Of a stretch of 64,000 nucleotides of DNA, positions 6,601-64,000 are shown piece after piece. The first letter of the stretch is position 1. Every line of letters starts with the position of its first letter. The DNA is taken from positions 270,002-334,001 of the forward strand of contig NW_003314288.1 of the NCBI RefSeq assembly GCF_000143415.4, in the 5' to 3' direction. A program made the translations under genes and the position numbers. The stretch is from Selaginella moellendorffii. Lineage: Eukaryota > Plantae > Lycopodiophyta. Under the pieces are notes generated by a model, which did not search any database, was not told the origin of the DNA, and saw nothing but the letters and a program-made list of their open reading frames with translations.

Positions 6601-6853
6601 ATCACAAATAACTACTACTACAGAAATTAACAATCACTTTTTGCATTTCACAAAGAATTTCATTTACTATATGCTATATGTATAAATTGGCATGTCACAA
6701 AGAACCTTGTAACGAACATTTTTCATTTTGCAAAACTCAAGTTTTCACAAGAACTCTTCATGGTTTTCCAGATAAGAACGATAAGAATGACAGTACTATT
6801 ATTGACACAACCCAAAAGCAAGTAGCAAACAAAACTATCTCGGATGGATGGAC

Positions 6854-8899: not shown

Positions 8900-11800
8900 A
8901 TGGAGACCAGAGTTTCCGAGGTGAGCTGGAACAGCCTCGACAGCCTCGTCTCGGGCGATGATCCGAGTGGATTCGGCTCCTTCTCGGACTTCCTGGCACA
9001 GGCGGATCAAGATGCCGCGGCACGCCCTTTAGATCCGGAGGAGAAGAGTGGGAACAGCGGCAAGGAGGAGGGAAATATCGGTTTTCCAGTGGCTCAAGGC
9101 AACGATGCTTCGTTTGGCTATCAGGGAGAGGATTTCTCCCCAAAGGTCCAGAGTGGTCAAGATTTTGGTAGCTACCAGGATTCTCTAGAGGCGTCGTTTG
9201 GCTCTTTGGCGACAAAGGATGCACCGAGTTACGATCCTTTTGTAGCGAAGGGCAGTCAGGAGGTTTTCAACTACCAGGATCCAGCTCCAACACAGGCTGC
9301 CACTACTGAGAGTTTGGGCTTGCAGTCAAGCCAAAATACTCCGGCTGAGAATTCTATCCAAGCTCCAGTTCCTGCCACGACTGAGAGTTTTGGCTACCAG
9401 GCAGGCCAAAATACTTTGCCTCAGAGTTCTTTTAGCAGCCATCTGGGTGGGCAAGACTTTTCCAGTTACCAAGAAGAAACACTGCAATCTTTTCCCCACC
9501 AGACGCATAGCTACCAGAACGCTTCCGGCTACCAAGGGAGCACGGGCCAGCGTTTTCCACAACAGATGTTCGGCTACCAACAAGGCCAGGATTCTTTTCC
9601 AACGCAGCAAACTGGTCAAGAGAGTTTTAGCTACCAGGGCCAGAATTCTTTCCAGTACCAGAATTCCTTTCAACCGCAGATCCCCCTGGAGAATAGAACA
9701 AGTCAAGCGCAGATTTCTCACGGTGGTTTTAGCTATCAAACGGGCCAACCGCAGGTCTCTCACGATAGTCTTAGCTATCAAACGGGACAACCGCAGACTG
9801 CTCAAGGCTACCAAGTTCCCGAGTACCCCGGATGGACTTACAACTACCAAACTGGGCAATGGGAGCAATCAACTTCCGGCTACTATGGGAGTCAGCAGCA
9901 GTTTGGACAAGGTTATGCTAACTACGCTGGAAACAACGGCAGCACACAGGACTATCACTCTTATACTTCTTCTCAGTATCAATTCGGTCAGCCAGCAAAC
10001 TATGCGGTTACGCCTCCCAGGACACAGGAGGAAGCCTTCAGGTCGACTGCGGGAAGACCACCCTGTACTGTGACTGCGTTTGGTTTTGGTGGAAGGTTAG
10101 TGATTATGAAACCAAAGGGAGCCGAACAGGTAATGAAGGAAAGGAACTTTGCAAGTAGTTTGATTGCTAACCCGCGCAAATTTTGTTTCTGCAGTTCTCG
10201 ACTTCGCAGCCATTTCAGATTTTCCAGATGAATCAGCTGGCAGACTTTGGTCTCGGTTACGGGCACAGCAGTGGCCCGCTTGCTGGCAACGCGTCCATGA
10301 AGGACGTGATGAAATGGTTGGACGAGAAGACTATGAAACTGGAAGAGTCTGGTAGCAGTAACCTTGCATCCTTGCGGTATATGTGGGGGGTGCTTAAGAT
10401 TTGCTGCCAACACTACGGCAACCTTCGGTCGACTGTCAATATTGCAGCAATGGGTAGGCAGGTAGAATTTATTTTTTCTTGAGTGTTTTACTAGGAGGAA
10501 TAACTTACTGTCTTTAATCCAGGATGATAACGGACCTGAAGTAGCGCTTGCGAAGCTGCTAGAGCCAAGTAAGAGCGAAGAGTCATGGGCTTTTGGCTCT
10601 CGCTGTCTACAGACAACTCCAACCGAACAGCAAATGCAGGTTGGGCAGTCTTTTTCTCTTGAGTTGATACAAACAAAGACTTTCTGGCGACAGGCAACTG
10701 CATTTGAGGTGAAAAGGCTACTGATTGCCGGAAAGCAGAAAGAGGCTTTACGGGCTGCTCAAGACGGGCAACTTTGGGGATGTGCTCTTCTTATGGCCCG
10801 GCAGCTGGGAGAGAAGGTACCTTGTCTTGTAGCTTTGATGTATAGACCGTTAGTGATGGTCTTGTGGTTTTTAATAGTTCTACACCGACACTATAGCGGA
10901 GATGGCTCAACGTCAGTTTCAACCAGGGTTTCCCCTCCGGACTCTAACTCTTCTTTATGCTGGTCAACATGCCGGAGTGTTCGTAGGGAACACTAATTTG
11001 TCAAACGTAACGGCGCTTCAACCTCAACCGGTTCCAGCGTCCGCTGTAGATGGTGCAACACAGGTGAAATACTTTTATCAAGCTACTCTCTTGCTTAAGG
11101 AGTGCATGTTGACTTGCAGGACGCAGTAGAAGGAATGCTCGAAGAATGGCAGGAAAACCTGGCTATAATGGCAGCTAACCGAACTAATGGGGACGAGAGA
11201 GTGATTATGCATCTTGGTGATTGTCTCTGGAGACATCGAGATGAGGTATATACATGGTCACACGTTGATGTGTCTCATAGTTTTAACTTGCAGATATGTG
11301 GAGCCCATATTTGCTATCTTGTTGCAAATGCTACTTTTGAGCCTTTCTCCCCTTCTGCCAGACTTTGTCTTATAGGTGCCGACCATTGTAAGTATCCACG
11401 CACGTACGCTAGTCCAGAAGCTATCCAGGTAAGCCGTGTTTGTCCTCAATAACAATTGTTAACGTTTTCTTCATCAGCGAACGGAAGTGTACGAATTTGC
11501 AAGAGTGACTGGCAATTCCCAGTTTATTTTACTTCCTTTTCAGCCATACAAGCTTATTTATGCGTCGATGCTTGCTGAAGCTGGAAAGATAAACGAAGCT
11601 TTAAGGTTGGTTGTGATTCTTAACTGTATGCTTCGTTAACACAAGGTTTCTCTTCGAAGGTATTGCCTAGCGGTGTTGAAAACATTGAAAACAGCGGGCC
11701 ATGCAGCTGATGTGTGCAAAGAAGCGGCTGTAGCCTTGGAAGAGCGTCTTCGTATCCACTCTCAGGTTTGTAAGCGGACACTCGGCGTTTATACTCACTT

Positions 11801-13127
11801 TCCTGTGATCCAGGGAGGCTCGACGTCAATTGTGCAACGGTTTTTTGGCAATATTGGTCTACACAAGATGATAGGCCCTTCGCCCCCGAAAGCTTCTGAT
11901 AATGCTGATATTAATAACCGTCCCGCAACAGCTTCTAGCAGAAGCAGTGTATCACTTGCCTCGTCGGCATCAATGGAACCCATAAGTGATATTACGAGAA
12001 GATCCAACATGCCAGCGAGAAGCATTTCTGAGCCTGACTTTAGGCCTGCACAGGTAACTCGACTTGCTCTTGTGTACCTTCGATTAAGACTTGTATTCTT
12101 TCATCAGATCGTTAGTCCAGCGAAAGGAACGCCAAACAGAGGCGTCTTTACTTCTTTCGTGCAAAGAGCGATGGGCTTCATAAAAACACCTTCGAAGGAG
12201 GTTTGTAGAAGCTTTGGAAAGAGCGCTAGCTGATTGATGGTCGGTATGTGATGCAGGCAAAGCTTGGCGACAGCAACAAGTTTAGATACGACGAGACACT
12301 GAAGCGCTGGGTTGAAGAAGGAGCCGAGGCACAAGCGCCAGAGCTTCCGTTGGCTCCTCCTCCCACGGCAAACAGGCTCGTCTCCCGCGTGGAGGAGAAC
12401 GGCGCTCCTATTTCCATGTCGCCGGAGAGACCACAGCCAACTCCGGAAAGGCCGCAACCGGTTGTGAGTGGAATCCCACCAATGCCTCCAAGCAGTAACC
12501 AGTACGCAGCTCGCGCACGTCAAAACGTTAGATCAAGGTACCGTTTTGGTCATTCCCATCACTCCAGTCTCACGAAGTTTTTGCAGATATGTCGATACAT
12601 TCAACAAAGGTAGCGTAACACCATCCAAGACATCATCGGACTCTCCTCCACTGTTTGGCGTGGTGCCAAAGGCAAGCGCAAAGCCTTTGGCTCCAGCGAG
12701 ATTTTTCGTGCCTGCGGCCGCTGCTGCCGCTGCTCCAGATATCAACAGCAACCATTCGGTGGATCCTTACTCGGCACCGGCCTTTGTCTCCGACACGGCG
12801 TTCTCAAACGGGAATGGAGCATTCGCTCAGCCGGTTGTACAGGATATGAGAAACGATCCGGGGCCAACGCCTGATCATCTCTCGAGCAGCTCTTCGCCAG
12901 CAATGTTCTATTCGAATCACTATCCAGCAGCACCGTCGACCGTCTCGTTGCCGCCACCTCCAGCTCTGGAAGTCACTCCGCCAGTGATGGTCGAGCAGCA
13001 GCAGCAAAACCAACACCAGGAAAGTTCGATTCATCGGCACCACCATCAACAGTCCGGCACAGTGGGATTCGAAGCTGCCAGTTCCTCCGGAGTGTTTGGA
13101 GACGACTTGCAAGAGGTGGAATTGTAA
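8900..13127 (+). CDS. SEC16: COPII scaffold protein SEC16 (MAG5-like), multi-exon
   Basis: Low-complexity Q/G/S/Y N-terminus, then RPPCTVTAFGFGGRL, WGVLKICCQHYG, WQENLAIMAANRT, AHICYLVA, RLCLIGADH..YASPEAIQ/RTEVYE, FQPYKLIYA, AKLGDSNKFRYDETLKRWVEEG, VRSR/YVDTFN and terminal DDLQEVEL*. Confidence 0.93.
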
Positions 13128-13382
13128 ATCACACTCCACAAGTAAGTAGTGTTGCTGGGTGGATTTTGGTAGAGCAGTGTAGCGAAGTAGTAGTCGTGGA
13201 AGGAGGAATTTTTTTTTGGCTGGGGTGATTCTTTGGAGCCACGAGCGAAGCGAGGAAGCTCCTTAAAGTTGCTAGAGAAAGGAAACTCTTTACAGTGTAA
13301 CAAAAAGGCCTTGTGATACCTCGAATAATCTCCCGGATTTAAAATATGGCGCGTGTAGCTCACAAGGCATCGTCTTGGTGGG

Positions 13383-14720
13383 ATGAAACGCTGGTTGTCT
13401 ACGCGCGGTGTGGGCTTTGGAGGAATCGACAAGGATCTTTGATGCTTTGCCGGCCAAGAACATCGCGTCGTGGACGGCGCTCGTGACCGCGTATGCCGAG
13501 AGTGGGCATCCGGGGGAGTTCGATCGAATGGCGGTGTGGGACGTAGTTTCCTCCACTGCGATGGTCAAGGCGCTGGGCGATTGCGGGCGGATTGGATCGA
13601 GCAAGGCAGTGTTTGATGCGATGCCCGAGAGGAACTGCAAGACGTGGGCGACGCTGCTGCGGGGATTTGCTCGCGGCGGAGAGATTGGGCGAGCGAGAGA
13701 AGTGCTGGATATGATGCCCGAGACGAATATGGTAGCGTGGACGATCCTCGTGCAGGGTTTCGCGCAGCGCGGGCGAGTGGGCGATGCGAAGGCCGCGTTT
13801 GATTCCATGCCCGAGAAGAACAGCATCACTCGCGCGGTGATTCTCGTCATGTTTGCGGAGAATGGATTCGTGGAGGAGGCGGAGGATGTCTTCCAGGAAA
13901 TTGTCCACCGAAACGCGATCCTCTAGGGGGCGATGCACTGCTGCTATGCCCAAAATGGGGATTTGATTCAAGCCAAGAGTTTGTTTGATAGGATGCCTGA
14001 GCACAGCGTACTGTCGTGGACGATTATGATCAAGTCATACGCGCGAAACGGTGATGCTGATCAAGGAAAACACTTGTTTGAAGAAATGCCACACAGAGAT
14101 CTTGTTTCATGGAACGCGATAATTGCTGTTTATGCCCAGAGAGGTCGTTTCCGGGCGTTTTCTTTGGTTTGCTGCTGGGATTCCTATTCATGGAACACAA
14201 TTCTAGTGGTATATGCTCTAGATGGAAATATTTGTGATGCTAAGAAAGCGTTCGATGAGATGCCAACTTGGAACTTGGTCTCCTGGAACACGATTCTTGC
14301 AGCATATGCCCAGACCGGGCAGCGACCCAGCTCTTCTGGGCGATGTTTCTTCACGGCTTTGGCCCCGACAAGGCAGCATTTGCCATTGTTTTGATGGCAT
14401 GTAGTTATCTGGGGCTCGTCAAGGAAGCAGTAAGCTACTTCACGGCAATGAGCTTTGACAATGGATTGGATCCTTCGCAAGACCGCTACGCCTGCATTGT
14501 TGATGCTCTCGGACGACTAGGGCGATTGAAAGAGGCCGAGGATGTCCTGGAGAATATGCCTTTGCCAGCAGATGGAGTTGCATGGGCAACGTTTCTTACC
14601 GCGTGCAAAAACCACGGGGAGATGAATCGAGGGATGCATGCTGCGGAATTTACGCCAGTCCAGCCTTGTGAGTGATGCATTGCCTTATGTGATGCTGGAG
14701 AACATCTTCAGAGCAGTTCA
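13383..14720 (+). pseudogene. PLS-E PPR pseudogene, copy A
   Basis: PPR motifs split over ORFs 13408-13926, 13933-14394 and 14268-14675 by a stop and frameshifts; ends in E-domain-like WATFLTACKNHG...PYVMLENIF. Confidence 0.85.
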
Positions 14721-15759
14721 GACTTGATTCTTCACTGTTTTGATGTGTTGACCCAAACATCGATCGTTGATATCCAGCCATTCCGTGAGCCACCCCATCC
14801 CCCATGGATGGAGAGCGGGACGCACAGAGATTGGGCATAGGAGAGTCTTCAGAAATCTATCTGGAGTGTTAAGTGCAGTGGGTTTGCTATAGACAGCAAC
14901 GCAAGATCCAATGCTGCTGTTGTGAATTTGAGCAGCAGCACTGCGCTCCTCCTGCTCCACATCAGTGCCATGCTAGGCGTGGCAATCCAGATTCTCAAGA
15001 CCATGCCGGTGAGAGTCTATCATGAGCTCCTGTTGAAAGTGGGAAGTAGTGGTGTGAAATGCTTGCGTTTGAGGCGCAGGTGGAGATGGGCTCATTGATA
15101 CCTCGTTCCCATTGCCTTCCTTGTATCCTATCTCCCCCGTTGCCTCCCGACATGCTTCATATGTTATCCTCTCTGAGTTCCATATGTTATCCTCTCCGCT
15201 GGGCCTCAGCCCATTCTTGATATTTACGAAGGCTCCATTGGATGTTGATACAGAGAATTAAATTTAAAGACAATTGGCCCACTTGTATGATGGGCTTAAT
15301 CTATGTTGAATGGATTGCTCTTTGCAAAGCATGTATGCAAGGCGATTTTACAAGGAAATTTATCAAATCTTCCGCAAAGTCAATGCCATACCTGTCAAGA
15401 ACCAAATCGTTGGAGAGCTTTAGGAATTAGTATAGGGATATATAGGGATGCATAATGAAGGATAGTTAAGTAATTTGATGATGAGAAGTTTGACATGGCA
15501 CAAGCAGAGTGTGCCTCTCAAGGCATCCAAATCTATGTTCTAGCTCCCATTTGGAAATAAGAAAGATTACAAGTGCCATTCCTATCCCTTCGAAAACAGT
15601 CTTTCTATTCTGCAGGGTGGAGTTTTACATATAATGTTGTTGTCACAAATAATTATAAAGCAAGTATAAGGGAATATTGCTTCTTCAATGGCAACTAGCA
15701 CTTTGTAAAATGTTTTTGGAATATAAGTATATGAAACTTTTCAAAACTATCATGTTGGA
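13383..15759 (+). repeat. Segmental duplication block A (PPR pseudogene plus ~1 kb downstream)
   Basis: Matches 27275-29588 (inverted) and 33533-35750 (direct); cut at ~15759 by the Gypsy integrase. Confidence 0.85.
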
Positions 15760-18700
15760 ATCATCTAACATTTCTAGCATAGCCAATCTTTTCTTGATTG
15801 ATTCTTCTTGATTAATTTGCAGCTGTTCTATAAGCCCAAAGAGCATCATAAACTCTATTATCCCAATCTTTAAGATTGGTTTGTACTATTTTCTTCAGTA
15901 TATTCTTGAGTGTTTTGTTTGTGGATTCGGCTTGGCTGTTGCCTTGTGGATAATATGGTGTAAATTTCTTATGTTTAATGAAGAATTCATCTAGTAAAAT
16001 CTTGATTGTTTCATTGAGGAAATGTGTTCCTCTATCCATTACTATTTCTCGAGGTAATCCATATCTTGTGATAATCATTTCATAAAGAAACTTTGCTGTA
16101 TTCTTTGTTGTCGCTTTCTTGAGTGGTTGGGCTTCTACTCATTTTGTCATATAATCTGTTGCTACCAAAATATATTGATTTCCATTTCTGCTCTTTTGTA
16201 TGGGTCCTACAAAATCTAGGTCCCATCTTTGGAAAGGTTCCATTGCTATAGTTGGATTCAGTTCTTGTGTTTGTTTCTTGGGTGGAAATTGTGTACGCTG
16301 ACAAATATCACAAGTTTGACAAAACTATGAAGTGTCTTTCAATAATGTAGGCCACCATATGCCTGCTTGCAATATTTTCCTTGCTGTAATTTCTTTTGCA
16401 AAATGCCCTCCAGAGCAACTGGCATAGGCTTCTTCTAATAACTCGTGTTTCTCTCCTTGTGAACGTACACATCTTCTTAACATATTATCATGTCAAATTC
16501 TATAGAGTCTTCCTCTGACAACTGAGTATCGTCGTGTCCTCAAGATGAATTATTTCCTTTGATCTTGCGTGGTACATGATGTGGGAACTTTTGTAGTAGT
16601 TAAATAATAAAAGATTTTTTGAAGTGTATTGTGGGTGGTAATCTTAAAAAGATGTGAATCAGGTAAGTCATCGTTGGGGTCTTGTATATTTTCCCCGGTT
16701 GTAATTCTGCTGAGATGATCAACTTATTCATGGTATTTGCCAGGTTTGTGAACTATTTCGAAATTGAATTCCTATAATAACAAAAACCATCTTGCTATTC
16801 ATCCGCTAAAGATGGGTTTATTGAGTAGATGAATCAATGCTTGATGATCAATGAATAATTTTACTTTGTTGGAAAGTAAATAGTGTATAAACTTGGTTAA
16901 GGCATATATCATACCTAAAGCTTCTTTTTCTGTAGTTGTATAATTCATTTTAGATGGAGAAAGTTGTCGACTTGCATAATATAATGGGTGATCACAATGA
17001 TCATCTTTTCTTTGGCAAAGAATTGCTCCTAGAGCATAGCCAGAGGCATCAACTTGTACAAGAAATTCTTGAGTCCAAATTGGTTAGACAAGAATTGGTG
17101 CCTGTGTAAGTTTATCTTTGAGTATCAAGAATGCTTGCTAACATTCTTGAGTCCAGTGATAAAATTTATCTTTCTTGAGTAAATCAGTTAAGGGTTTAGC
17201 GACTTGGAATAGTCTTTGATAAATCTTCTATAGTAACCCATCTTGCCTAGAAAACTTCGCAAACTTTTAAGATCATGAGGTGGTTGCATTTTCATAATGA
17301 CGTCAATTTTAACTTTATCAATTTGAATGCCATGAGTGGAAATAATGTGAGTATTCCTGATTTAACAAGGAAAGTACATTTTTCAGGATTAAGAGCAACT
17401 TGGTTTTGTATACATTTGATAAAACATTTCTTGAGGTATTCAAGGTGTTTGTCTTTAGGTCCAAAAACACTAAAGTCATCCATAAAGACTCGCATGAAAT
17501 CTGTGAGATAATCTTGGAAAGTATTGGTAATGATCTGTTGAAATGTAAATGGGGCATTGGTTAATCCAAATGGCATTCGCATGTATGCGTATGCTCCCCA
17601 TGAACTTATGAAAGTTGTTTTATGTTGATCCTCGACAACTATATGTACTTGATTGTAGCCTGAAAAATGAGTACATCTCATGACCGGTGACGGCATCAAG
17701 TATTTCATCTGAAAATGGGATGGGAAAAACATCTTTTGTAGTTGGATCATTTAACTTTTTGTAGTTCACACAAATGCGTAATTTCCCATTTTTCTTAGAT
17801 ACAATGACTAAAGGTGATATTCATTAGGCATTTTGTATTGAATATATAAATCCTACTTCAAGGAGTTTGTAAATTTCAGCTTTTACTTTTTCAGTGAACA
17901 TTATATTCATCCGATAAGTAGTTTGTTTAATGGGTCGAATTCCTGGAAGTAATTCGATTCGATGTGTACATAAATCAGGTGGTATACCTTTGAGGTCTTT
18001 ATATGACCAAGCAAAGACATCTTTATACTTAGTAAGAAGCACAGTAGCGTCAAGTTTAAAAGGTTTGTCGAGTTGTATAGCTATTAAGACATTTTGTGGA
18101 TTTGAGGGAACCCCTAGATTTAATTCTTCAATATCTTCATTGATATTACGCAAAGTTTGAATTCTTGATTTTCAATGGTGAGAGCTAGTTCATTTTGTAT
18201 ATCTAGGTGATATTTTATAATTTGTAGTTGTTCTGGTTGTATCACTGGTTTTGTTTTTTGTATGGTGGTTTTTGTTGCTTTAAATTCAGTTGTTTTTGAA
18301 TCTTCATAGTCTTGACACTTGGTTACAGGAAGTATCCTGTTGAGGTCAATTTCTTGGATTGCTTTAAGTTCAGGATATGCTTCAAATAATTTAGCTTCTT
18401 CAAGATCGTCTAAGCCTTCTTGCCAATTGTATTCTTGAACTTGTGTTGGTCGGAAACTTCTTGAGATTTTCTTGCTTGTCAATGTTGATATTTTAGTCTG
18501 TCCTTGTTGAGATTGGATACATATCTCATGTTCCATCCAATACTGTGCAAAAACAACTTTGTTAAGCCAAGGTTTGCCTAACAAGATTTTGTAAGAAGAT
18601 TCTTCAATCAACATTTTTAACACAAGAAAGTTAACTTTAAATTTATGTCCTTTGACTGTCATAGAGCCATCACGCATGATGCCTGCTGGTCTGACAACTC

Positions 18701-36227: not shown

Positions 36228-36925
36228 CTAAATAGAAGACAAGTGCCTGAGGTTGTACATATCGAAGTACAAACCAAAGAAGCAGATCAATGGATCTCCC
36301 CGCGACGCGTCAATCAGCAGTCGAACGAGCCGAGCAGCGCATTCTTGATCCTCTTCCAGTCGATCCACTTTCCTGTAACCAATGGTGCTACCGTTGCTCA
36401 CCAGGTACCAGCCCAGCTCGCTGTCCCATGCCTCGACGTGATATTCCATGACCCTTTGTCCCATGTTTACTGGCTCTCGGATCTCCAGTGCGTTGAACTT
36501 TGAGACCTTGCCAAGATCAAGCTCGATCCAGCCGGTCGACTCCCCTTGCATTGGAGCCCAGAAAGTTTCCATACACTCGTCAAGGATTTGCTTCGGCCCA
36601 AACGAAGAGCTGCGAATGCTGCTTGCTGTCACGGACAAGGGATTCGCTGCTAAGTTGACGCTGAAGATGGAATCTACGGCGGAGCTAAACCGCTCCAGCG
36701 TCTGGAAGTCGGATTCGTCGATCAGTCCCGACGAGTTTGGAGGGACGTTGAGCAGGAGCAAGCAGTTCCTGGCGGATGATTTGTAGAAAACGTCGAGCAG
36801 CTGCTCCAGGGATTTTGGAGCCTCGTTCCTGTGCCAAAACCAACCGGGCCTGATGGAGATATCGCACTCCGGAGGGAGCCAGTCGGTTCCAGCACCAGAC
36901 ATCAAGTACCTGTTGATGTTGCGAA
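36228..36925 (-). pseudogene. C-terminal half of a GH29 alpha-L-fucosidase (with F5/8 type C-like domain), joined in frame to an unrelated Gly-rich leader
   Basis: DWLPPECDISIRPGWFWH, KSLEQLLDVFYKSSARNCLLLLNVPPNSSGLI, EPVNMGQRV, GSTIGYRK; the N-terminal catalytic barrel is absent. Confidence 0.82.
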
Positions 36926-37260
36926 TTGGATCGCCGGACGTGGCTTGGGCTCCTCCGGGCGCGGCTTGGACTCCTCCCGCTGTGGCTTCGGCTCCTCCCA
37001 CCGAGGCTTGGCCTTCTCCTGGCGATGATCCATGGCCTCCTCCTCCCGGAGAAGAACCGCGGCGTCTACTCTAGGAGGAGTAGAACCATGGCCTCCTCCT
37101 CCCGGGGCACCCCCTCCTCGAGCCGCCTCAGAACCATGGCCTAATCCTCCCGGGGCCAGATTCAGAGATCCGCGGCCAACCCCGGCCACCCCGCGCCCTC
37201 CTCCCACTCCATGGCCACCTCTCCCTCCATGGGCACCTCTTCCTCCTCCTGTTGGTGAAG
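36926..37260 (-). repeat. GC-rich degenerate repeats encoding Gly-rich (GGHGS-type) sequence
   Basis: Recurrent CCATGGCCTCCTCCTCC units and ~21-bp GGCTTGG..TCCTCC units. Confidence 0.6.
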
Positions 37261-38531: not shown

Positions 38532-41500
38532 TCAAAAGTAGTTGTCACAGGAACATCTGCCATCCTGGAACACATGAACCCGACTGGCATCTTTGCAGAT
38601 GATTAGCCTTTTTTCCAGCTTAGAGATGAGAGCAGTGGCCACATGGCAATCGTCACAAACTCGGAGATTTTTCACAATTCTGATGGTCTCCTTCTGGTGT
38701 GAGTTCACCAGAGCACACCCCAGCGCAAGCTTCTCACTGTGGCCGCACAGGTGATCCTCTTTCTCTTCCTTGGGTATGTCTTTTAGAACGTTGATCACAT
38801 CGCTCGCGTACCCCTCCTCTTTCATTCTCAGCAACAATTGCTGGAGCTTGGCCGCAATCTCGTTGCTCTGTGAGTGACTCCTATCCCCGACAGAAAAAGA
38901 ATGCACTTTTCCTGAGCTAACATCCGTCCACCAGCTTCTCCCGGGCTCCCTGAAGCTGCCTTCACCTCTCATTCTCTCCACAACAGCGGCCCTTTCACTG
39001 AGCATCCCCAGGTTTCCAAATATATTGGCCATCAATGCGTAGGGCGTGCCGCTCTTGGGATCCATCTCCACAAGACGCTCAAACGCGAGTTTGCCGATCG
39101 TGTAATTCTTCCACTTCCGGCAGGCTCCGAGCAGGGACGTCCAAACCACTGCATCCGGTTCAAAAGGCATGGCTCTGAGAACTCTCACAGCTTCGTCGAG
39201 GAGGTTAGCTCGCCCGAGCATATCGATCAGGCACACATAATGCTCCAGACGTGGCTTGACTCCATACTGCTTGGGCATTTCATCCAGAAGCTGCCTTCCT
39301 TTCCCGACCAGACCACCATGGCTGCAAGCGTTCAACACCGAAACAAAACTCACATCGTCAGCTTTACAGCCCTCCTCCTGAGTCATGGAATAGAAACGCT
39401 CCAAGGCCTCGATCGATCGGCCCTGGAGAGTGTAAGCCTGTATGAGAGAGTTCCAGAGAGCCGTGTCGTCCCGAGCTCGGCACTCGTCAAACGCTTCCTG
39501 AGCAGAATCAACATCGCCACATTTGCCGTAGAAGCTCACCAGGCTGGAGCCCAGAACTGGATTGTTTTTCAGCAGCCCTTTATGCTTCGCCAGCTGGTGA
39601 ATCTCCCTCCCGAGCTTGATCGCCATCACACTCCCGCAAGCAACAAGGACACAGGTGTAGGTGCAAGCATCAGCTTGAATGGTGTTATCAGCTCTCAGGG
39701 CAGAGTAATACTCCAGAGCAAGTTCAGCTCGCCCGTTCGTGTTGCAGCCCTGGATGATCGCAGTGTAGGACACAACACTCCGAGTTCCCATGGAGTTGAA
39801 AATCTTGCGAGCCTCCTCAAGCTCGCCACACTTGCAATACATGTCTACCAGGCAATTCGCCACGAACAGATCTAGCTGTTTCTTCTCCTTGCTCAGCATT
39901 GAATGGATCTCCATCCCGATGCGTAGAGCTCTCTCCCTCTTCTCGCTGGATTCGGTAGCAAGTGTGGAGCAGGCACTGATCACCACGACATGAGTCCGAT
40001 CGTCGGGTTGAATGGTGTTATCAGCTCTCAGGGCAGAGTAGTACTCCAGAGCAAGTTCAGCTCGCCCGTTCGTGTTGCACCCCTGGATGATCGCGGTGTA
40101 GGGCACAACACTCCGAGTTCCCATGGAGTGGAAAATCTTGCGAGCCTCCTCAAGCTCGCCACACTTGCAGTACATGTCTACCAGGCAATTCGCCACGAAC
40201 AGATCTAGCTGTTTCTTCTCCTTGCTCAGCATTGAATGGATCTCCATCCCGATGCGTAGAGCTCTCTCCCTCTTCTCGCTGGATTCGGCAGCAAGTGTGG
40301 AGCAGGCGCTGATCACCACGACATGAGTCCGATCGTCGGGTTGAATGGTGTTATCAGCTCTCAGGGCAGAGTAGTACTCCAGAGCAAGTTCAGCTCGCCC
40401 GTTCGTGTTGCACCCCTGGATGATCGCGGTGTAGGACACAACACTCCGAGTTCCCATGGAGTGGAAAATCTTGCAAGCCTCCTCAAGCTCGCCACACTTG
40501 CAGTACATGTCTACCAGGCAAGTCGCCATGTACAGACCTAGATGTTTCTTCTCCTTGCTCAGTACTGAATGGACTTCCATCCCGATGCGTAGAGCTCTCT
40601 CCCTCTTCTCGCTGGATTCGGTAGCAAGTGTGGAGCAGGCGCTGATCACCGCAACATGTGTCCGATCGTTGGGTTGAATGGTGGTACAAGCTCTCAGGGC
40701 AGAGTAGTACTCCAGAGCAAGTTGAGCTCGCCCGTTCGTGTTGCACCCCTGGATGATCGCAGTGTAGGACACAACACTCCGAGTTCCCATGGAGTGGAAA
40801 ATCTTGCGAGCCTCCTCAAGCTCGCCACACTTGCAGTACATGTCTACCAGGCAATTCGCCACGAACAGACCTAGATGTTTCTTCTCCTTGCTCAGTACTG
40901 AATGGACTTCCATCCCGATGCGTAGAGCTCTCTCCCTCTTCTCGCTGGCAGTAGCAAGTGTGGAGCAGGCGCTGATCACCGCGACATGTGTCCAATCGTC
41001 GGGTTGAATGGTGTTATCAGCTCTCAGGGCAGAGTAGTACTCCAGAGCAAGTTCAGCTCGCCCGTTCGAGCCGCAGCCGTGGATGATCGCGTTGTAGGAC
41101 ACAACACTCCGAGTTCCCATGGAGTGGAAAATCTTGCGAGCCTCCTCAAGCTCGCCACACTTGCAGTACATGTCTACCAGGCAAGTCGCCACGAACAGAT
41201 CTAGCTGTTTCTTCTCCTTGCTCAGCATTGAATGGATCTCCATCCCGATGCGTAGAGCTCTCTCCCTCTTCTCGCTGGATTCGGTAGCAAGTCTGGAGCA
41301 GGCGCTGATCACCGCGACATGTGTCCGATCGTTGGGTTGAATGGTGGTACAAGCTCTCAGGGCAGAGTAGTACTCCAGAGCGAGTTCAGCTTGCCCGTTC
41401 GAGCCGCAGCCCTGGATGATCGCGTTGTAGGACACAACACTCCGGGTTCCCATGGAGTCGAAAATCTTGCGAGCCTCCTCAAGCTCGCCACACTTGCAGT

Positions 41501-41789
41501 ACATATCGATCAATCCCGTCAACAAGTAGATGTTGCTTTTGTGCTCATCACTCTTGAGCACAGCTTCATGGGCTTGTTTTCCCAAAGAAAGGGATCTGCT
41601 CTCAGCTGAGTCTCTCACGCGGTGTATCAGCCTCCCTAAACTCACCGGTTCAGCTACAGGTGGGGTATGTGGAGATTTGTAGCGGGCCGTGGTGGCCTTA
41701 CCTACAGCTGGGTCAGCGAGCGACTCGAGTTTTGCAGAGACCCAGGTTGGTGATTTCCTGTTGGCGATCCCTCTCTCCGGTAGAAACAT
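38532..41789 (-). CDS. PLS-class PPR-DYW RNA editing factor (DYW:WW-type cytidine deaminase domain)
   Basis: Uninterrupted ORF (track 38532-41825; first ATG 41789). PLS array, P2-L2-S2, E1/E2, PGRSWWTD, HSEKLA, KNLRVCDDCH, terminal CSCDNYF. Confidence 0.95.
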   Translation of the reverse strand: MFLPERGIANRKSPTWVSAKLESLADPAVGKATTARYKSPHTPPVAEPVSLGRLIHRVRDSAESRSLSLGKQAHEAVLKSDEHKSNIYLLTGLIDMYCKCGELEEARKIFDSMGTRSVVSYNAIIQGCGSNGQAELALEYYSALRACTTIQPNDRTHVAVISACSRLATESSEKRERALRIGMEIHSMLSKEKKQLDLFVATCLVDMYCKCGELEEARKIFHSMGTRSVVSYNAIIHGCGSNGRAELALEYYSALRADNTIQPDDWTHVAVISACSTLATASEKRERALRIGMEVHSVLSKEKKHLGLFVANCLVDMYCKCGELEEARKIFHSMGTRSVVSYTAIIQGCNTNGRAQLALEYYSALRACTTIQPNDRTHVAVISACSTLATESSEKRERALRIGMEVHSVLSKEKKHLGLYMATCLVDMYCKCGELEEACKIFHSMGTRSVVSYTAIIQGCNTNGRAELALEYYSALRADNTIQPDDRTHVVVISACSTLAAESSEKRERALRIGMEIHSMLSKEKKQLDLFVANCLVDMYCKCGELEEARKIFHSMGTRSVVPYTAIIQGCNTNGRAELALEYYSALRADNTIQPDDRTHVVVISACSTLATESSEKRERALRIGMEIHSMLSKEKKQLDLFVANCLVDMYCKCGELEEARKIFNSMGTRSVVSYTAIIQGCNTNGRAELALEYYSALRADNTIQADACTYTCVLVACGSVMAIKLGREIHQLAKHKGLLKNNPVLGSSLVSFYGKCGDVDSAQEAFDECRARDDTALWNSLIQAYTLQGRSIEALERFYSMTQEEGCKADDVSFVSVLNACSHGGLVGKGRQLLDEMPKQYGVKPRLEHYVCLIDMLGRANLLDEAVRVLRAMPFEPDAVVWTSLLGACRKWKNYTIGKLAFERLVEMDPKSGTPYALMANIFGNLGMLSERAAVVERMRGEGSFREPGRSWWTDVSSGKVHSFSVGDRSHSQSNEIAAKLQQLLLRMKEEGYASDVINVLKDIPKEEKEDHLCGHSEKLALGCALVNSHQKETIRIVKNLRVCDDCHVATALISKLEKRLIICKDASRVHVFQDGRCSCDNYF
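39670..41510 (-). repeat. Tandem array of about 5.5 near-identical 333-bp (111-aa) P-L-S units
   Basis: Six copies of DMYCKCGELEEA.KIF.SMGTRSVV.Y; period 333 bp (one unit 330 bp), also visible in the periodic antisense ORFs. Confidence 0.95.
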
Positions 41790-42129
41790 GTTTGAAACTG
41801 CATGAGATTGTTGCACACACACCACACAAACCCTAGCGCCGCACGCATACCCTAGAAATCCCGATTTGTTAGTACTTAACTGTAGCAGTAAAAAGCTCGT
41901 GTTTTCCTGTTTTTTCTTTTTCTAATTCTTATCCTTTTTAAACTTTACAATGTCACAGCTTAACTGCAGCAGCTTAGATGTTTATTGTCTCTTTGATTGG
42001 GCAGTGACCTCCACCAAAGAGAAGGTCACCAGAGCCATAGCACACACCATCAAGACAATCATCAGTGCTCCATCAAGATTATAAATTGAGTGTGAAAGGG
42101 AATAAAAGTTACCAACTTAAACTTAATAT

Positions 42130-61210: not shown

Positions 61211-64000
61211 ATCACGCCTCCTCTGATTCAGATTCAGATTGTTCACCTTGAAATAAAATACATTAGAAACTTAGTAAAGGAATATTAATGAATCTCACCT
61301 TGAACCCGGGTTATGAATGCTCTTGCTGCATCTCTTGCATGGTCTGGCAAGGTGATGGTGGCACTCTGCTTCCGCATCCAACCATGCACAACATTATCCA
61401 CCGATATGCTCATGCTGGGATCCCTTGGATTCAGCACCCATCTCTTTTCTAAGCAATCCTTCGTATATCCGGAACTTGGCTTGAACCACTCCACAGTTAC
61501 ATTGAAGGAGTTAGTTTCCGCGTCCTCCTCTGCATCAGTGATGCAGCGCCCCACCCATATCATTTGTTTTTTATTATTGGGTCTGACAAGCACGACCATT
61601 CCTTTGCAGACCTGTACTGGATTGAATGCTGAATCCGGCTTCTTGTTCCTCGGCCCACAATAGTGATCCTCAACATCGTTATCTGTCACTGCATTTCCAG
61701 AGGACATTGTTCCGCTACTATCTGGTGCTCTAGGTTCTGGCCAAAAGGACTCTTCCAATTCTTCATATACAACCGGCCCATTTTGGATAGCAGATATAAT
61801 CTTCTCCCAGTATTCGAGCAAAGGCTTGCACCTCTTAAAATAGGATTCTCCACCAAACACCAACCCCCTCTTCCAGAAGGCAATATGCTGTCTAATCCCG
61901 GCCACTATACTTTCCTGGTCTTTGAGTCCATCCGGGTGCATCGGCCGTGGGGAACCCTGAGGAATCATAGGTTCCCCAGTTATGGGATCTCTCTTGAAGA
62001 GTTCAATGCCATCCACTGGCAGCCACACTGTGTCCCATTCTCTCATCTTGTACCTCATCACTGGAGCACCGTCACGCATGCTGAAATGAAACTGAAGAGG
62101 CTTGGAGTGGCCAATCAGCGTTTCGGATCCGTCCCTGATGTAGCCTCTTACAAACCCCTTAAAGTCTGGAACCTCTGTCACAAGTGCAGCTTCAACAATG
62201 CCTTTGATGCAATTTTGGAATTCATCGTAGAGTTGTGGGAGGGTGAGGACATTGGATCGCCGGAGGGACTCTGCCAGGTGACTGAACATGGCATCGACGT
62301 CTTCATGAGTGTGCCCAACCATGAGAAAGCCAAGTGTAACCGTTTCAAATATGCCTTTGGCAACAAGCATCGCCAAGTACGCGAAGACGTACATGTTTTT
62401 GTTCTCACTGCCAGCATTGTCTGTTTGGAGCAGAAGATGGGGTGGAAGGCCACATCGGCCGCAAGAACTTCCTTGAGATTCTGCTTCGTTTGGATGAGGC
62501 TGTGCATTCACCGGGCGACCAGCCTCGTCGGAATGGCATGAGGCCTCACGTGATAACCCTACAATCTGACGGCCAACATATTCACTGGGATGGCATGGGG
62601 CCCCATGCGATACTGCAAGCCTTTGCTCCTCCTCCAGCTGAACCCTGTATGGGGTTCGATCGACAAGGGCCTTATGCAAGGGTTGGCCGTTCAGCTCAGT
62701 CTGCGCACTTTGCAGAGACCTTAAGTGTTTTGCTAGGGACGCAATCATCATGTTTGCACCCCCGCCACCCCATAGAGGTACAAAGAAGTTCCCATAGTTC
62801 TGGGCACCATGCCCATGAGCGATTATGCCAAACAGAGACACAGGCAGCTGCATGGATGAAGAGATTGCCTTGGGGGCAGGATTGAGTCGAGGTAAGCACG
62901 TCTTTTTCTGGTCCATTTTGTCGTGGATGATGCAGAGGTAAGAGTCAGGTCTCTCCATGGAGAGAATCCTGTTATGATAATATGCAGTCCTGCAGCTTCT
63001 CTACTCGATGTTGTGGTCGAGCCGCCTTCTAACCAACGTCTCTCGCTCTTGAGCACTGCAAGAATTCTTCGACAAAGCCATTTTGATAGCAGTGCACTCG
63101 TCACACTTTGAAAAGCTGGAGTACTTTCCTATACTCACATCCCTGAACCTGTTGCTCCACAATCTACTAAATCAAGATTGGCTCAGCTTCCTGTAGCCAT
63201 TACTCTGGAGTTCCCAATTCACATCTTCCAATATGGCCCCGTTGGTATACATGGAAGGGAGAACTCGTTGGGTGTCTCGTGTTCCATCTTCCAAGAGGCG
63301 GGTTTTATGTGGTTGTTGCTCGCTACATGTCTCGACAAACCTCTTGAAGATTGCCTCTCCATATACAACATGACCCCTGGTTTTGTGCGTACCGTCGTTC
63401 CCATGGATTGCCTGTTGAACCCTTTGTTCCTCGAACTCAGTTTTGATTCTGTAGAATGTGCTTCGAGGGACTCCATAAATGATTCTCCATGCCTTCATGC
63501 AGACCAAACCCCTCTGGAAGACCATGCACCCCACCTAATGTTCTGAAGCATCAACAGATGACCGTAATGCCTCATACACAAAATTGCGAGCTGCCTTCCA
63601 GGACAATGTCTTGTATCTTGCTCTCTCCTCTTCAATAGCATCCCAATCAGCATGTTGACAGCACCTCCTCTTGCAACAAGCAACTGTCGAGACCATTCGA
63701 ACCTCCATCGCCATTTTCTGCCTTTTCGGTTCGTTGCTCAGATCCCTTTGGCTGCGCTGTAGGAAGGTGTACTTTCTTTTCCCATGAAGAGATGTTCTAT
63801 CATTAGTTGTAGTGGTGTTTGATTGTGAATCCTTCACATTCTCAAACACTAAATGCCTCAATTTCCACCGCACAATGCTTCCAATAGTCAGACTGTTTTC
63901 TTCTGTGTCAACAACCTCTAAAATCGCAACTCCAATATCATCCCAGCCCAATTCTTGATTAGCAACCGCATCTCTTGGATCGACAACTGTGGCTAAGCCC
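61211..64000 (-). mobile_element. Sola-like DDD transposase pseudogene (5' end beyond the window)
   Basis: One reading frame with three stops (63535, 63172, ~63001). CCKRRCC, VCMKAWRIIYGV, FSKCDEC, IHDKMDQKK, LQTDNAGSENKN, FLMVGHTHEDVDAMFS; probable short last exon GEQSESESEEA* after an intron at ~61249-61298. Superfamily assignment is tentative. Confidence 0.75.

What the first reader, a model, noticed from the sequence alone, without database searches (positions are those of the whole stretch)
39670..41530. Natural 'designer' PPR: near-identical repeats that cover all four RNA-recognition codes
Seen: the six P motifs are almost identical, yet their 5th/last residues read N/N, N/D, T/N, T/D, T/D, T/D. 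The S motifs read T/S, T/S, N/S, T/S, N/S, N/S. Half-motif variants (YNAII.GCGSNG vs YTAIIQGCNTNG; RACTTIQPN vs RADNTIQPD; QLD vs HLG) reassort independently between units. Established PPR code: NN=C/U, ND=U, TN=A, TD=G, NS=C, TS probably A. This predicts a target of about A-Y-n-A-U-n-C-A-n-A-G-n-C-G-n-C-G upstream of the edited C. Inference: unequal crossover or gene conversion between two ancestral unit types generates new specificities combinatorially, as in TALEs. That offers a route to the very large editing-site numbers in Selaginella and a ready scaffold for engineering.
Basis: partly seen in the sequence, partly recalled or inferred. Interest (0 to 1): 0.82.

Follow-up and report, generated by a model that had tools for sequence, protein, structure and literature searches.

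The report
Shuffled near-identical PPR editing-factor repeats
A spikemoss gene for an organelle RNA-editing enzyme builds most of its RNA-reading tract from six almost identical 111-residue blocks. In at least eight related genes these blocks change in number (4 to 9) and swap small cassettes that include the base-choosing residues, so each gene is predicted, but not shown, to read a different RNA.

Summary
Minus-strand ORF 38532-41825 is an intact PLS-class PPR-E1-E2-DYW gene. Positions 39669-41531 hold 5.5 tandem copies of a 333-bp unit (S31 + P36 + L44 residues) at about 95% nt identity.

I recovered seven more uninterrupted ORFs and one fragmented locus of the family from the public S. moellendorffii assembly. 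Public gene models splice the arrays out. The eight uninterrupted ORFs, one with a broken DYW end, have 4-9 units and eight different code strings. Exchange between units is well supported (Rmin 15; clustered tracts copied from other units).

Four of six code positions (S5, P5, P-last, L-last) are balanced two-state polymorphisms, ranking 5th-9th of 111 codons. Sixteen non-code codons vary as much, and the enrichment is modest (Fisher p 0.009; circular-shift 4/111). Unit pN/pS is 0.6-1.0, so selection is unproven.

The window copy lacks an N-terminal motif that most paralogs keep. Its expression, its array order in long reads and its RNA target are untested.

The scan had already found this family on other DNA of this genome (s1-361244, s1-422237). 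I found no paper describing it.

Verdict: a real new variant of a known kind, with recombination-driven PPR diversification inside PLS editing factors.

The parts
38532..41825 (-). Whole uninterrupted ORF of the PPR-E1-E2-DYW gene. It has 1097 codons counted from a mechanical GTG. The first ATG is at 41789-41787 and the stop at 38534-38532.
   Evidence: ORF list. Pfam: PPR_2 3.7e-87, PPR 9.2e-79, E_motif 6e-09, Eplus 3.1e-05, DYW_deaminase 2.6e-30.
41532..41789 (-). N-terminal leader plus a first, diverged L-type motif. Relative to paralogs L002/L003 this copy and L001 have lost 86 bp and 5 bp. That removes an N-terminal motif (MEWKTFF..SYPDFK) and brings a new ATG into frame.
   Evidence: DNA alignment of four loci. 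AF2 pLDDT is below 50 for model residues 1-45.
41199..41531 (-). Unit 1: S (TS) 41439-41531, P (NN) 41331-41438, L (VD) 41199-41330. The first 8 codons lie outside the near-identical repeat.
40869..41198 (-). Unit 2: S (TS), P (ND), L (VG). It is 110 codons long, with a one-codon deletion in L.
40536..40868 (-). Unit 3: S (NS), P (TN), L (VG).
40203..40535 (-). Unit 4: S (TS, with the LYMAT/EEAC markers shared by unit 4 of L001 and L003), P (TD), L (VD).
39870..40202 (-). Unit 5: S (NS), P (TD), L (VD).
39669..39869 (-). Unit 6, S (NS) and P (TD) only. Near-identity ends at about codon 65 of this unit.
39108..39668 (-). Unique C-terminal PPR motifs: an ordinary 36-residue L, then S, P2, L2 and S2. 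This part is 94-99% nt identical among family members.
   Evidence: Sequence read against the PLS motif pattern. Paralog comparison.
38823..39107 (-). E1/E2 (E and E+) motifs.
   Evidence: Pfam E_motif residues 907-965 and Eplus residues 974-1001.
38535..38822 (-). DYW cytidine-deaminase domain with intact HSE and CDDCH zinc-binding signatures. The C-terminus reads DNYF.
   Evidence: Pfam DYW_deaminase 2.6e-30, residues 1005-1096. Motifs read in the translation.

Best explanation
What it is. The window carries an intact nuclear gene of Selaginella moellendorffii for a PLS-class PPR-E1-E2-DYW protein, the kind that directs C-to-U RNA editing in organelles. Its RNA-binding tract is one diverged L motif, then 5.5 near-identical 111-residue S-P-L triplets, then a unique L-S-P2-L2-S2-E1-E2-DYW tail. 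In the repeated triplets the L motif is lengthened to 44 residues.

The family. The gene belongs to a young multi-locus family. I saw nine loci in the public assembly, which holds both haplotypes. The tail is conserved, while the triplet array changes in two ways.
(a) Unequal crossover in register adds or removes whole 333-bp units, giving 4 to 9 units.
(b) Short gene-conversion tracts copy small two-state cassettes from one unit into another.

The cassettes are S5 T/N; P5 with P12/P13 (N-GS or T-NT); P30/P31 with P-last (CT-N or DN-D); and the L C-terminus with L-last (D or G). Because three of them carry the 5th/last code residues of S and P motifs, every gene ends up with a different predicted recognition string for nucleotides of about -9 to -25 upstream of the edited C.

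Shown here: the gene and its domains, the array, the cassettes, their reassortment, and the copy-number differences.

Inferred: that the proteins edit RNA, that the S and P motifs follow the canonical code here, that the different strings mean different targets, and that any of this is adaptive.
For: Domain architecture: Pfam PPR families, E, E+ and DYW, with HSE and CDDCH intact in the translation.

Fold: the AF2 model has mean pLDDT 90.8 and is a continuous helical-hairpin solenoid. The repeated L motif forms a longer hairpin, with helices of 15 and 20 residues.

Array: TRF period 333, 5.5 copies, 95% matches. Variable columns fall into linked blocks.

Family: uninterrupted ORFs at L001, L002, L003, L004, L006 and two at L007, with 4-9 units and eight different code strings. 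A further locus, L005, is fragmented.

Unit order: the window's units are reproduced position by position in L001. There are 0-3 nt differences on the diagonal (codons 9-65) against 1-16 off it.

Unit gain or loss: L001 has exactly one more unit than the window. L007 minus-strand units 3-5 and 6-8 are 0/999 nt different.

Conversion tracts: 9 of 11 differences between W_U4 and L003_U4 lie in codons 61-83 and switch P-last. Ten of 16 differences between W_U5 and L003_U5 lie in codons 29-47 and switch P5.

Recombination statistics: 324/780 incompatible site pairs, Rmin 15, 22/2000 permutations. The first four genes gave 0/2000.

Code positions: S5, P5, P-last and L-last rank 5th-9th of 111 codons by entropy.

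Tail: pooled lineage-private changes in the first four genes are 15 nonsynonymous to 11 synonymous, omega about 0.4 (my arithmetic). Pairwise omega is 0.2-0.5 except W-L001, where it is 1.0 on 9 changes.
Against: - No functional data exist. No RNA run is on record as holding this copy, and the RNA-like contigs laid carry the 5' end of the paralogs, not of the window.
- The window copy and L001 lack the N-terminal motif that most paralogs keep.
- The window lineage has 5 private nonsynonymous changes against 1 synonymous in the tail.
- Seven private letters in its 3' part were not seen in any of four read sets. This particular copy may therefore be under relaxed constraint or come from another accession.
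- Unit pN/pS of 0.6-1.0 fits neutrality as well as a mix of constraint and diversifying selection.
- Sixteen non-code codons vary as much as the code positions.
- Array order was not confirmed by reads that span it.
- N-terminal motifs of PLS factors usually contribute less to target choice than the C-terminal ones, and the C-terminal motifs are the same in all copies (my own knowledge).
Confidence: 0.8

Rival explanations
1. Neutral by-product. The family is a set of young, partly redundant and partly decaying duplicates. The near-identical array is kept similar by concerted evolution. The cassette mosaic, including the code residues, would then be neutral shuffling of old differences with no effect on which RNAs are edited, and the window copy may be on its way to becoming a pseudogene.
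For: - Unit pN/pS is 0.62-0.99.
- Shared polymorphisms run at roughly the neutral nonsynonymous-to-synonymous ratio: 23 to 8 informative sites, my classification of the sites listed.
- The window and L001 lost the N-terminal motif.
- The window tail has 5 private nonsynonymous changes to 1 synonymous.
- The L007 plus-strand copy has a broken DYW end, and L005 is fragmented.
- No RNA evidence exists for this copy.
Against: - Eight ORFs of 919-1491 codons stay open through highly recombinogenic repeats.
- Pooled tail omega is about 0.4 (my arithmetic).
- The variable states at S5, P5 and P-last are only the canonical code residues T/N and N/D, and they are kept at balanced frequencies.
- Enrichment at code positions survives a circular-shift control that preserves clustering, with 4 of 111 shifts reaching it.
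Confidence: 0.3
2. Homogenised old array. An ordinary, diverged PLS array was made nearly uniform by gene conversion. Purifying selection protected the specificity residues and their neighbours, so the cassettes would be preserved islands rather than newly shuffled modules.
For: - Differences are concentrated in short, highly divergent patches. For example, 4 nonsynonymous and 0 synonymous changes lie in codons 61-67, inside units that are otherwise 94-98% identical.
- The similarity covers a non-integer 5.5 units with sharp edges.
- Unit-unit pS (0.05-0.08) exceeds paralog dS (about 0.03), so the array predates the gene duplications.
Against: - The same few cassette haplotypes recur in many positions and in all combinations. 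Seven of eight possible S.P code words are seen.
- Positional orthologs in recent paralogs differ by whole cassettes.
- Unit number varies from 4 to 9.
- Preservation alone does not produce these patterns; active exchange is needed.
Confidence: 0.2
3. Assembly chimera. The mosaic order of units in the window is an artefact of assembling near-identical 333-bp repeats.
For: - Short-read unitigs break at the array edge (39704-39729), and none spans the array.
- The public assembly has an N gap inside the L002 array, further Ns in the L006 locus, and a perfect 999-bp duplication at L007 that could itself be an artefact.
Against: - The same unit order recurs at independently assembled loci. U1-U5 and the terminal unit recur in L001, and U1-U3 and most of U4 recur in L003.
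- The reading frame is kept through 1.9 kb of repeats in eight ORFs.
- Units differ by about 5%, which is enough to place Sanger-length or long reads.
Confidence: 0.05

Closest known systems
PLS-class PPR-E1-E2-DYW organellar C-to-U RNA editing factors, with the (P1-L1-S1)n-P2-L2-S2-E1-E2-DYW architecture as summarised in PMC8110955 and PMC10482289
   Same: Same motif order, E1/E2 motifs and DYW deaminase signatures. The nearest proteins outside the family are ordinary PPR-DYW proteins of lycophytes, ferns and seed plants, at 30-44% identity.
   Different: In ordinary members the triplets of one protein are diverged. Here they are 86-95% aa identical, the L motif is 44 residues instead of about 35, and the unit number varies between close paralogs.
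Restorer-of-fertility-like (RFL) P-class PPR gene clusters of angiosperms (PMC5075784)
   Same: PPR genes in which unequal crossover and gene conversion duplicate, insert or move single motifs. Variability there is concentrated at RNA-contacting residues, giving a flux of new specificities.
   Different: RFL genes are P-class, have no deaminase and occur in seed plants. Exchange there is mainly between clustered paralogs whose motifs are not near-identical. Here the exchange is among near-identical S-P-L triplets inside and between PLS-DYW genes of a lycophyte.
Synthetic consensus PPR editing factors, e.g. dsn3PLS-DYW (PMC8110955) and the S-type dsnS designs derived largely from Selaginella S arrays (PMC8809517)
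   Same: Repeated consensus-like P-L-S or S modules in which 5th/last residues set the base, fused to E1-E2-DYW.
   Different: The designer proteins vary only the code residues by design. The natural units also vary at about 16 other positions, and the function of the natural proteins is untested.
TALE repeat arrays of Xanthomonas (comparison from my own knowledge, not tested here)
   Same: Near-identical tandem repeats, one base per repeat, and specificity altered by recombination among repeats.
   Different: TALE repeats differ almost only at the two RVD residues and read DNA. Here only 4 of 20 highly variable codons are code positions and the units are triplets of three motif types.

Membership tests
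PLS-class PPR-DYW RNA editing factor | Alternating P, L and S pentatricopeptide motifs ending in P2-L2-S2 | tested here: met
   Pfam PPR families match along residues 93-886. The motif register was read in the translation. The AF2 model shows regular helical hairpins throughout.
PLS-class PPR-DYW RNA editing factor | E1/E2 (E, E+) extension motifs | tested here: met
   Pfam E_motif 6e-09 (36.5 bits, cut-off 27.3) and Eplus 3.1e-05 (24.1 bits, cut-off 24).
PLS-class PPR-DYW RNA editing factor | DYW cytidine-deaminase domain with HxE and CxxCH zinc-binding signatures | tested here: met
   Pfam DYW_deaminase 2.6e-30 covers profile positions 1-92 of 93. HSE and CDDCH are present in the translation.
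PLS-class PPR-DYW RNA editing factor | Import into mitochondria or plastids | tested here: inconclusive
   The N-terminal 45 residues are predicted disordered. The start codon differs from that of the paralogs because of 86-bp and 5-bp deletions. No targeting predictor was available.
PLS-class PPR-DYW RNA editing factor | Site-specific C-to-U editing of an organelle transcript | not testable with these tools
   No organelle genome or editome sequence was reachable, and no assay was possible.
Designer-like / TALE-like array (repeats identical except at specificity residues) | Unit-to-unit variation confined to the base-specifying residues | tested here: not met
   Twenty of 111 codons have a minor-state share of at least 15% across 49 units. 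Only 4 of them are 5th/last positions. S-last and L5 are nearly invariant.
Recombination-diversified PPR family (RFL-like mode of evolution) | Evidence of exchange among repeats or paralogs, and change of motif number | tested here: met
   Rmin 15 and 22/2000 permutations. Clustered conversion tracts. Unit number 4-9. The window's 3' part is closest to L006 (99.1%) while its 5' part is closest to L001.
Recombination-diversified PPR family (RFL-like mode of evolution) | Diversifying selection (omega above 1) at RNA-contacting residues | tested here: inconclusive
   Enrichment of variation at code positions is modest: Fisher p 0.009 and circular shift 4/111. Unit-wide pN/pS is 0.6-1.0. No recombination-aware site model was run.

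The most novel reading that the evidence does not exclude
This family may be a natural combinatorial generator of RNA-editing specificities. A handful of two-state cassettes, carrying the 5th/last residues of S and P motifs, would be continually reassorted by gene conversion and unequal crossover among near-identical triplets at several loci. New recognition strings would then arise in single steps and be selected as organelle editing sites appear. That would be a TALE- or RFL-like arms-length mechanism inside PLS-DYW editing factors, helping a lycophyte service thousands of sites.
Probability: 0.25. Interest if true: 0.78.

Novelty: new variant of a known kind. Interest (0 to 1): 0.6.

Why it matters
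How plants with thousands of organelle editing sites acquire matching specificity factors is an open question. This family offers a concrete, testable route: module shuffling rather than point mutation.

It is also a natural experiment on the PPR code in PLS motifs. Nearly isogenic proteins differ by defined cassettes at S5, P5 and P-last and by the number of triplets. Binding or E. coli editing assays on a few paralogs would measure what each cassette and each extra triplet contributes.

In practice, public gene models of S. moellendorffii splice these arrays out. Models of 223-617 residues are annotated where ORFs of 919-1491 codons exist. Such proteins are therefore invisible to protein-level surveys.

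Tried and rejected
- Word-index protein search with the array of the full-length protein. It found only ordinary PPR proteins at up to 35% identity, so the family seemed absent. The reason was mis-spliced short public models. Searches with a three-unit piece and with the unique tail found them.
- Exact look-up of the window protein from its first ATG: not on record.
- Reads. All 24 runs are kept as Logan contigs and none is on record as RNA. Unitigs in the array are 60-130 nt long, so neither unit order nor expression of this copy could be judged. The RNA-like contigs at the 5' end carry the paralog-type sequence, with CATCAC and ACAGG insertions and an NKFFSESYPD-coding loose end.
- Target-site scan with the predicted code: not done. 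No Selaginella organelle genome or editome sequence is reachable with these tools.
- Pfam on the paralogs' N-terminal 100 residues: no family. The 'PDF-like' label for that motif rests on earlier scan notes, not on my test.
- Literature. Seven searches found nothing on near-identical PLS triplet arrays or their shuffling in Selaginella. Gutmann et al. 2020 (Mol Plant), the most likely place for such a remark, is not held, so prior description cannot be excluded.
- Recurrent point mutation as the cause of the four P code pairs: rejected. Each state is linked to 3 further nucleotide changes nearby.
- The + strand 67-96-residue ORFs in the array: antisense echoes of the repeat, not genes.
- The big representative-protein search, the complex prediction and the fold searches were not used. 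The family assignment was not in doubt.
Full report
WHAT IS THERE

The region lies inside one long minus-strand ORF, 38532-41825. Counted from a mechanical GTG it has 1097 codons; the first ATG is at 41789. Pfam finds PPR families along most of its length, followed by the E motif, the E+ motif and a full-length DYW deaminase domain (2.6e-30). The HSE and CDDCH zinc-binding signatures are intact in the translation. Related proteins and loci place it in Selaginella moellendorffii.

Tandem Repeats Finder reports one array at 39675-41504, with period 333, 5.5 copies, 95% matches and no indels. In protein terms each unit is 111 residues: an S motif of 31, a P motif of 36 and an L motif of 44. The tract runs as a diverged L motif, then S-P-L five times, then S-P, then a unique L-S-P2-L2-S2-E1-E2-DYW tail.

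An AlphaFold2 model built on 50 homologues has mean pLDDT 90.8. It is a continuous solenoid of helical hairpins. The lengthened L motif forms a longer hairpin, with helices of 15 and 20 residues.

THE OBSERVATION

S motifs are TS, TS, NS, TS, NS, NS. P motifs are NN, ND, TN, TD, TD, TD.

The variable columns of the six units fall into linked blocks:
- S5 (T or N).
- P5 with P12/P13 (N-GS or T-NT).
- P30/P31 with P-last (CT-N or DN-D).
- L6.
- The L C-terminus with L-last (I-M-Q-D or V-V-H-G).

The blocks occur in all combinations. Because each state is tied to several neighbouring nucleotide changes, recurrent mutation cannot explain this. 'Almost identical' holds best for the S motifs (91-100% aa). 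The P motifs are 78-97% identical.

A FAMILY HIDDEN BY ANNOTATION

A search with the full-length protein found only ordinary PPR proteins at about 35% identity. Searches with a three-unit piece and with the unique tail found short S. moellendorffii gene models at 79-98% identity. Fetching their loci showed that the models (223-617 residues) splice out the repeats, while the DNA carries uninterrupted ORFs:
- L001: 7 units.
- L002: at least 5 units, with an N gap inside the array.
- L003: 7 units.
- L004: 4 units.
- L006: 5 units.
- L007 plus strand: 6 units, with a broken DYW end.
- L007 minus strand: 9 units.
- L005: fragmented.

The public assembly holds both haplotypes, so these nine loci are fewer distinct genes. 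All eight uninterrupted ORFs, the window's included, have different S/P code strings. Seven of the eight possible S.P code words occur.

EXCHANGE BETWEEN UNITS

The window's units match L001 position by position, with 0-3 nt differences on the diagonal (codons 9-65) against 1-16 off it. L001 has exactly one extra unit.

Between recent paralogs the differences cluster in tracts that carry the haplotype of another unit. Nine of 11 differences between W_U4 and L003_U4 lie in codons 61-83 and switch P-last from D to N. Ten of 16 differences between W_U5 and L003_U5 lie in codons 29-47 and switch P5 from T to N.

Among 29 distinct internal units there are 40 informative sites, of which 324 of 780 pairs fail the four-gamete test. 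Rmin is 15, and neighbouring sites are more compatible than in 1978 of 2000 site-order permutations. The first four genes gave 0/2000. The window alone is weaker. Its six units over codons 9-65 give Rmin 2 and 56/2000. Its four internal units over the whole unit give 436/2000, which is not significant.

L007 minus-strand units 3-5 and 6-8 are identical over 999 bp. This is either a very recent three-unit duplication or an assembly artefact. The window gene is itself mosaic at the family level. Its 3' part is closest to L006 (99.1%), and its 5' part is closest to L001, with which it shares two deletions.

Unit-unit pS (0.05-0.08) exceeds paralog dS (0.008-0.037), so the array is older than the gene duplications.

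IS THE VARIATION AIMED AT CODE POSITIONS?

Partly. Across 49 units, S5, P5, P-last and L-last are balanced two-state polymorphisms (entropy 0.97-0.98) and rank 5th to 9th of 111 codons. S-last and L5 are nearly invariant.

Twenty codons have a minor-state share of at least 15%. Four of them are code positions (Fisher p 0.009). A circular-shift control that keeps the clustering reaches this overlap in 4 of 111 shifts. With the first four genes the figures were p 0.006 and 3 of 111. These tests are not independent of shared ancestry and linkage.

The most variable codons are P13, P12, S25 and P16, which are not code positions. Unit pN/pS is 0.62-0.99, against 0.2-0.5 for the unique tail between most paralogs. 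That fits relaxed constraint as well as a mixture of constraint and diversifying selection. The array is therefore not designer-like in the strict sense.

STATE OF THIS COPY

The window and L001 share an 86-bp and a 5-bp deletion. These remove an N-terminal motif present in L002 and L003 and in L004 and L006, and they bring a different ATG into frame. Earlier scan notes call that motif OSB-type PDF; Pfam finds nothing there.

In the tail the window lineage has 5 private nonsynonymous changes and 1 synonymous. Seven private letters in its 3' part were absent from the contigs of all four runs laid, which instead carry the state shared by L001, L002 and L003.

All runs are short unitigs and none is on record as RNA. 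Neither array order nor expression of this copy is established.

MECHANISM, AND WHAT IS INFERRED

From established knowledge of PLS editing factors, S2 pairs with nucleotide -4. The array would then read about -9 to -25. With the canonical code the window string is A-Y-n A-U-n C-A-n A-G-n C-G-n C-G. The next two motifs are a unique L (n) and an S read as G (5th/last S/D). P2 follows and reads U (N/D).

An extra unit, as in L001, shifts all upstream units by three nucleotides. These are inferences. TS meaning A is uncertain, and L motifs often do not follow the code. The C-terminal motifs, which are usually the most important for site choice, are the same in all copies.

COMPARISON WITH WHAT IS KNOWN

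By architecture the gene is a member of the PLS-DYW editing-factor class.

The mode of evolution resembles the RFL P-class PPR clusters. There, unequal crossover and gene conversion move single motifs and variability sits at RNA-contacting residues (PMC5075784).

The look resembles synthetic consensus editing factors such as dsn3PLS-DYW (PMC8110955). Monotypic S arrays are already known from Selaginella (PMC8809517).

Weaker internal triplet similarity also exists elsewhere, at 50-70% identity with a lag of 101-102 residues in fern, Ginkgo and Diphasiastrum proteins. So this family is the extreme of a continuum.

I found no paper describing near-identical PLS triplets with reshuffled code residues. 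The most relevant survey is not held. The scan itself had already noted the same family on other DNA of this genome (s1-361244, s1-422237).

VERDICT

The selection, target and engineering parts are untested or only weakly supported. I rate it a new variant of a known kind, with interest 0.6.

Noticed in passing
L001:2003-5596, L002:10001-11977, L003:10001-13705, L006:6001-9090, L007:6001-10150: Public S. moellendorffii gene models of this family (223-617 residues, e.g. P0121, P0130, P0134, P0147, P0151, P0154) place introns inside the repeat array. The DNA carries uninterrupted ORFs of 919-1491 codons. This is probably an annotation artefact, and it hides the arrays from protein databases.
   Followed up: yes
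window 41700-41830; L003:10001-10130: Paralogs L002, L003, L004 and L006 start with a motif MEWKTFFRDPTFWWDNRFKKKNKFFSESYPDFK. Earlier scan notes call it OSB-type PDF. The window and L001 have lost it through shared 86-bp and 5-bp deletions and use a new ATG. Pfam finds no family in that stretch.
   Followed up: partly
L007 minus strand, ORF 11465-15937 of the reverse complement: This is a nine-unit family member in which units 3-5 and 6-8 are identical over 999 bp. It is either a very recent three-unit duplication or an assembly artefact.
   Followed up: partly
window 4714-6633 (-): A second, unrelated PPR ORF of 639 codons made of monotypic S-type motifs, as is typical for Selaginella. The ORF ends inside the E motif and has no DYW domain.
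   Followed up: no
window 38460, 38641, 38700, 38771, 38843, 38864, 39460: The window has seven private letters here. L001, L002 and L003 and the contigs of all four runs laid carry the other letter. The window's exact copy may therefore come from another accession or haplotype than those runs.
   Followed up: partly
window 36228-37001 (-); L003:14084-16904: An ORF with an F5/8 type C domain and a weak alpha-L-fucosidase match lies downstream of the PPR gene. A similar neighbour (Ferritin_2 plus F5/8 type C) follows the L003 copy, so the duplications were segmental.
   Followed up: no
P0014 (Adiantum), P0015, P0049 (Ginkgo), several Diphasiastrum proteins: Other PLS proteins show internal triplet periodicity at a lag of 101-102 residues with 55-70% identity over 222 residues. 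Partial triplet homogeneity is therefore not unique to Selaginella.
   Followed up: no
window 61285-62958 (-): A 557-codon ORF with a DUF7869 domain (1.4e-42), probably transposon-related. Earlier notes describe transposons in this part of the window.
   Followed up: no
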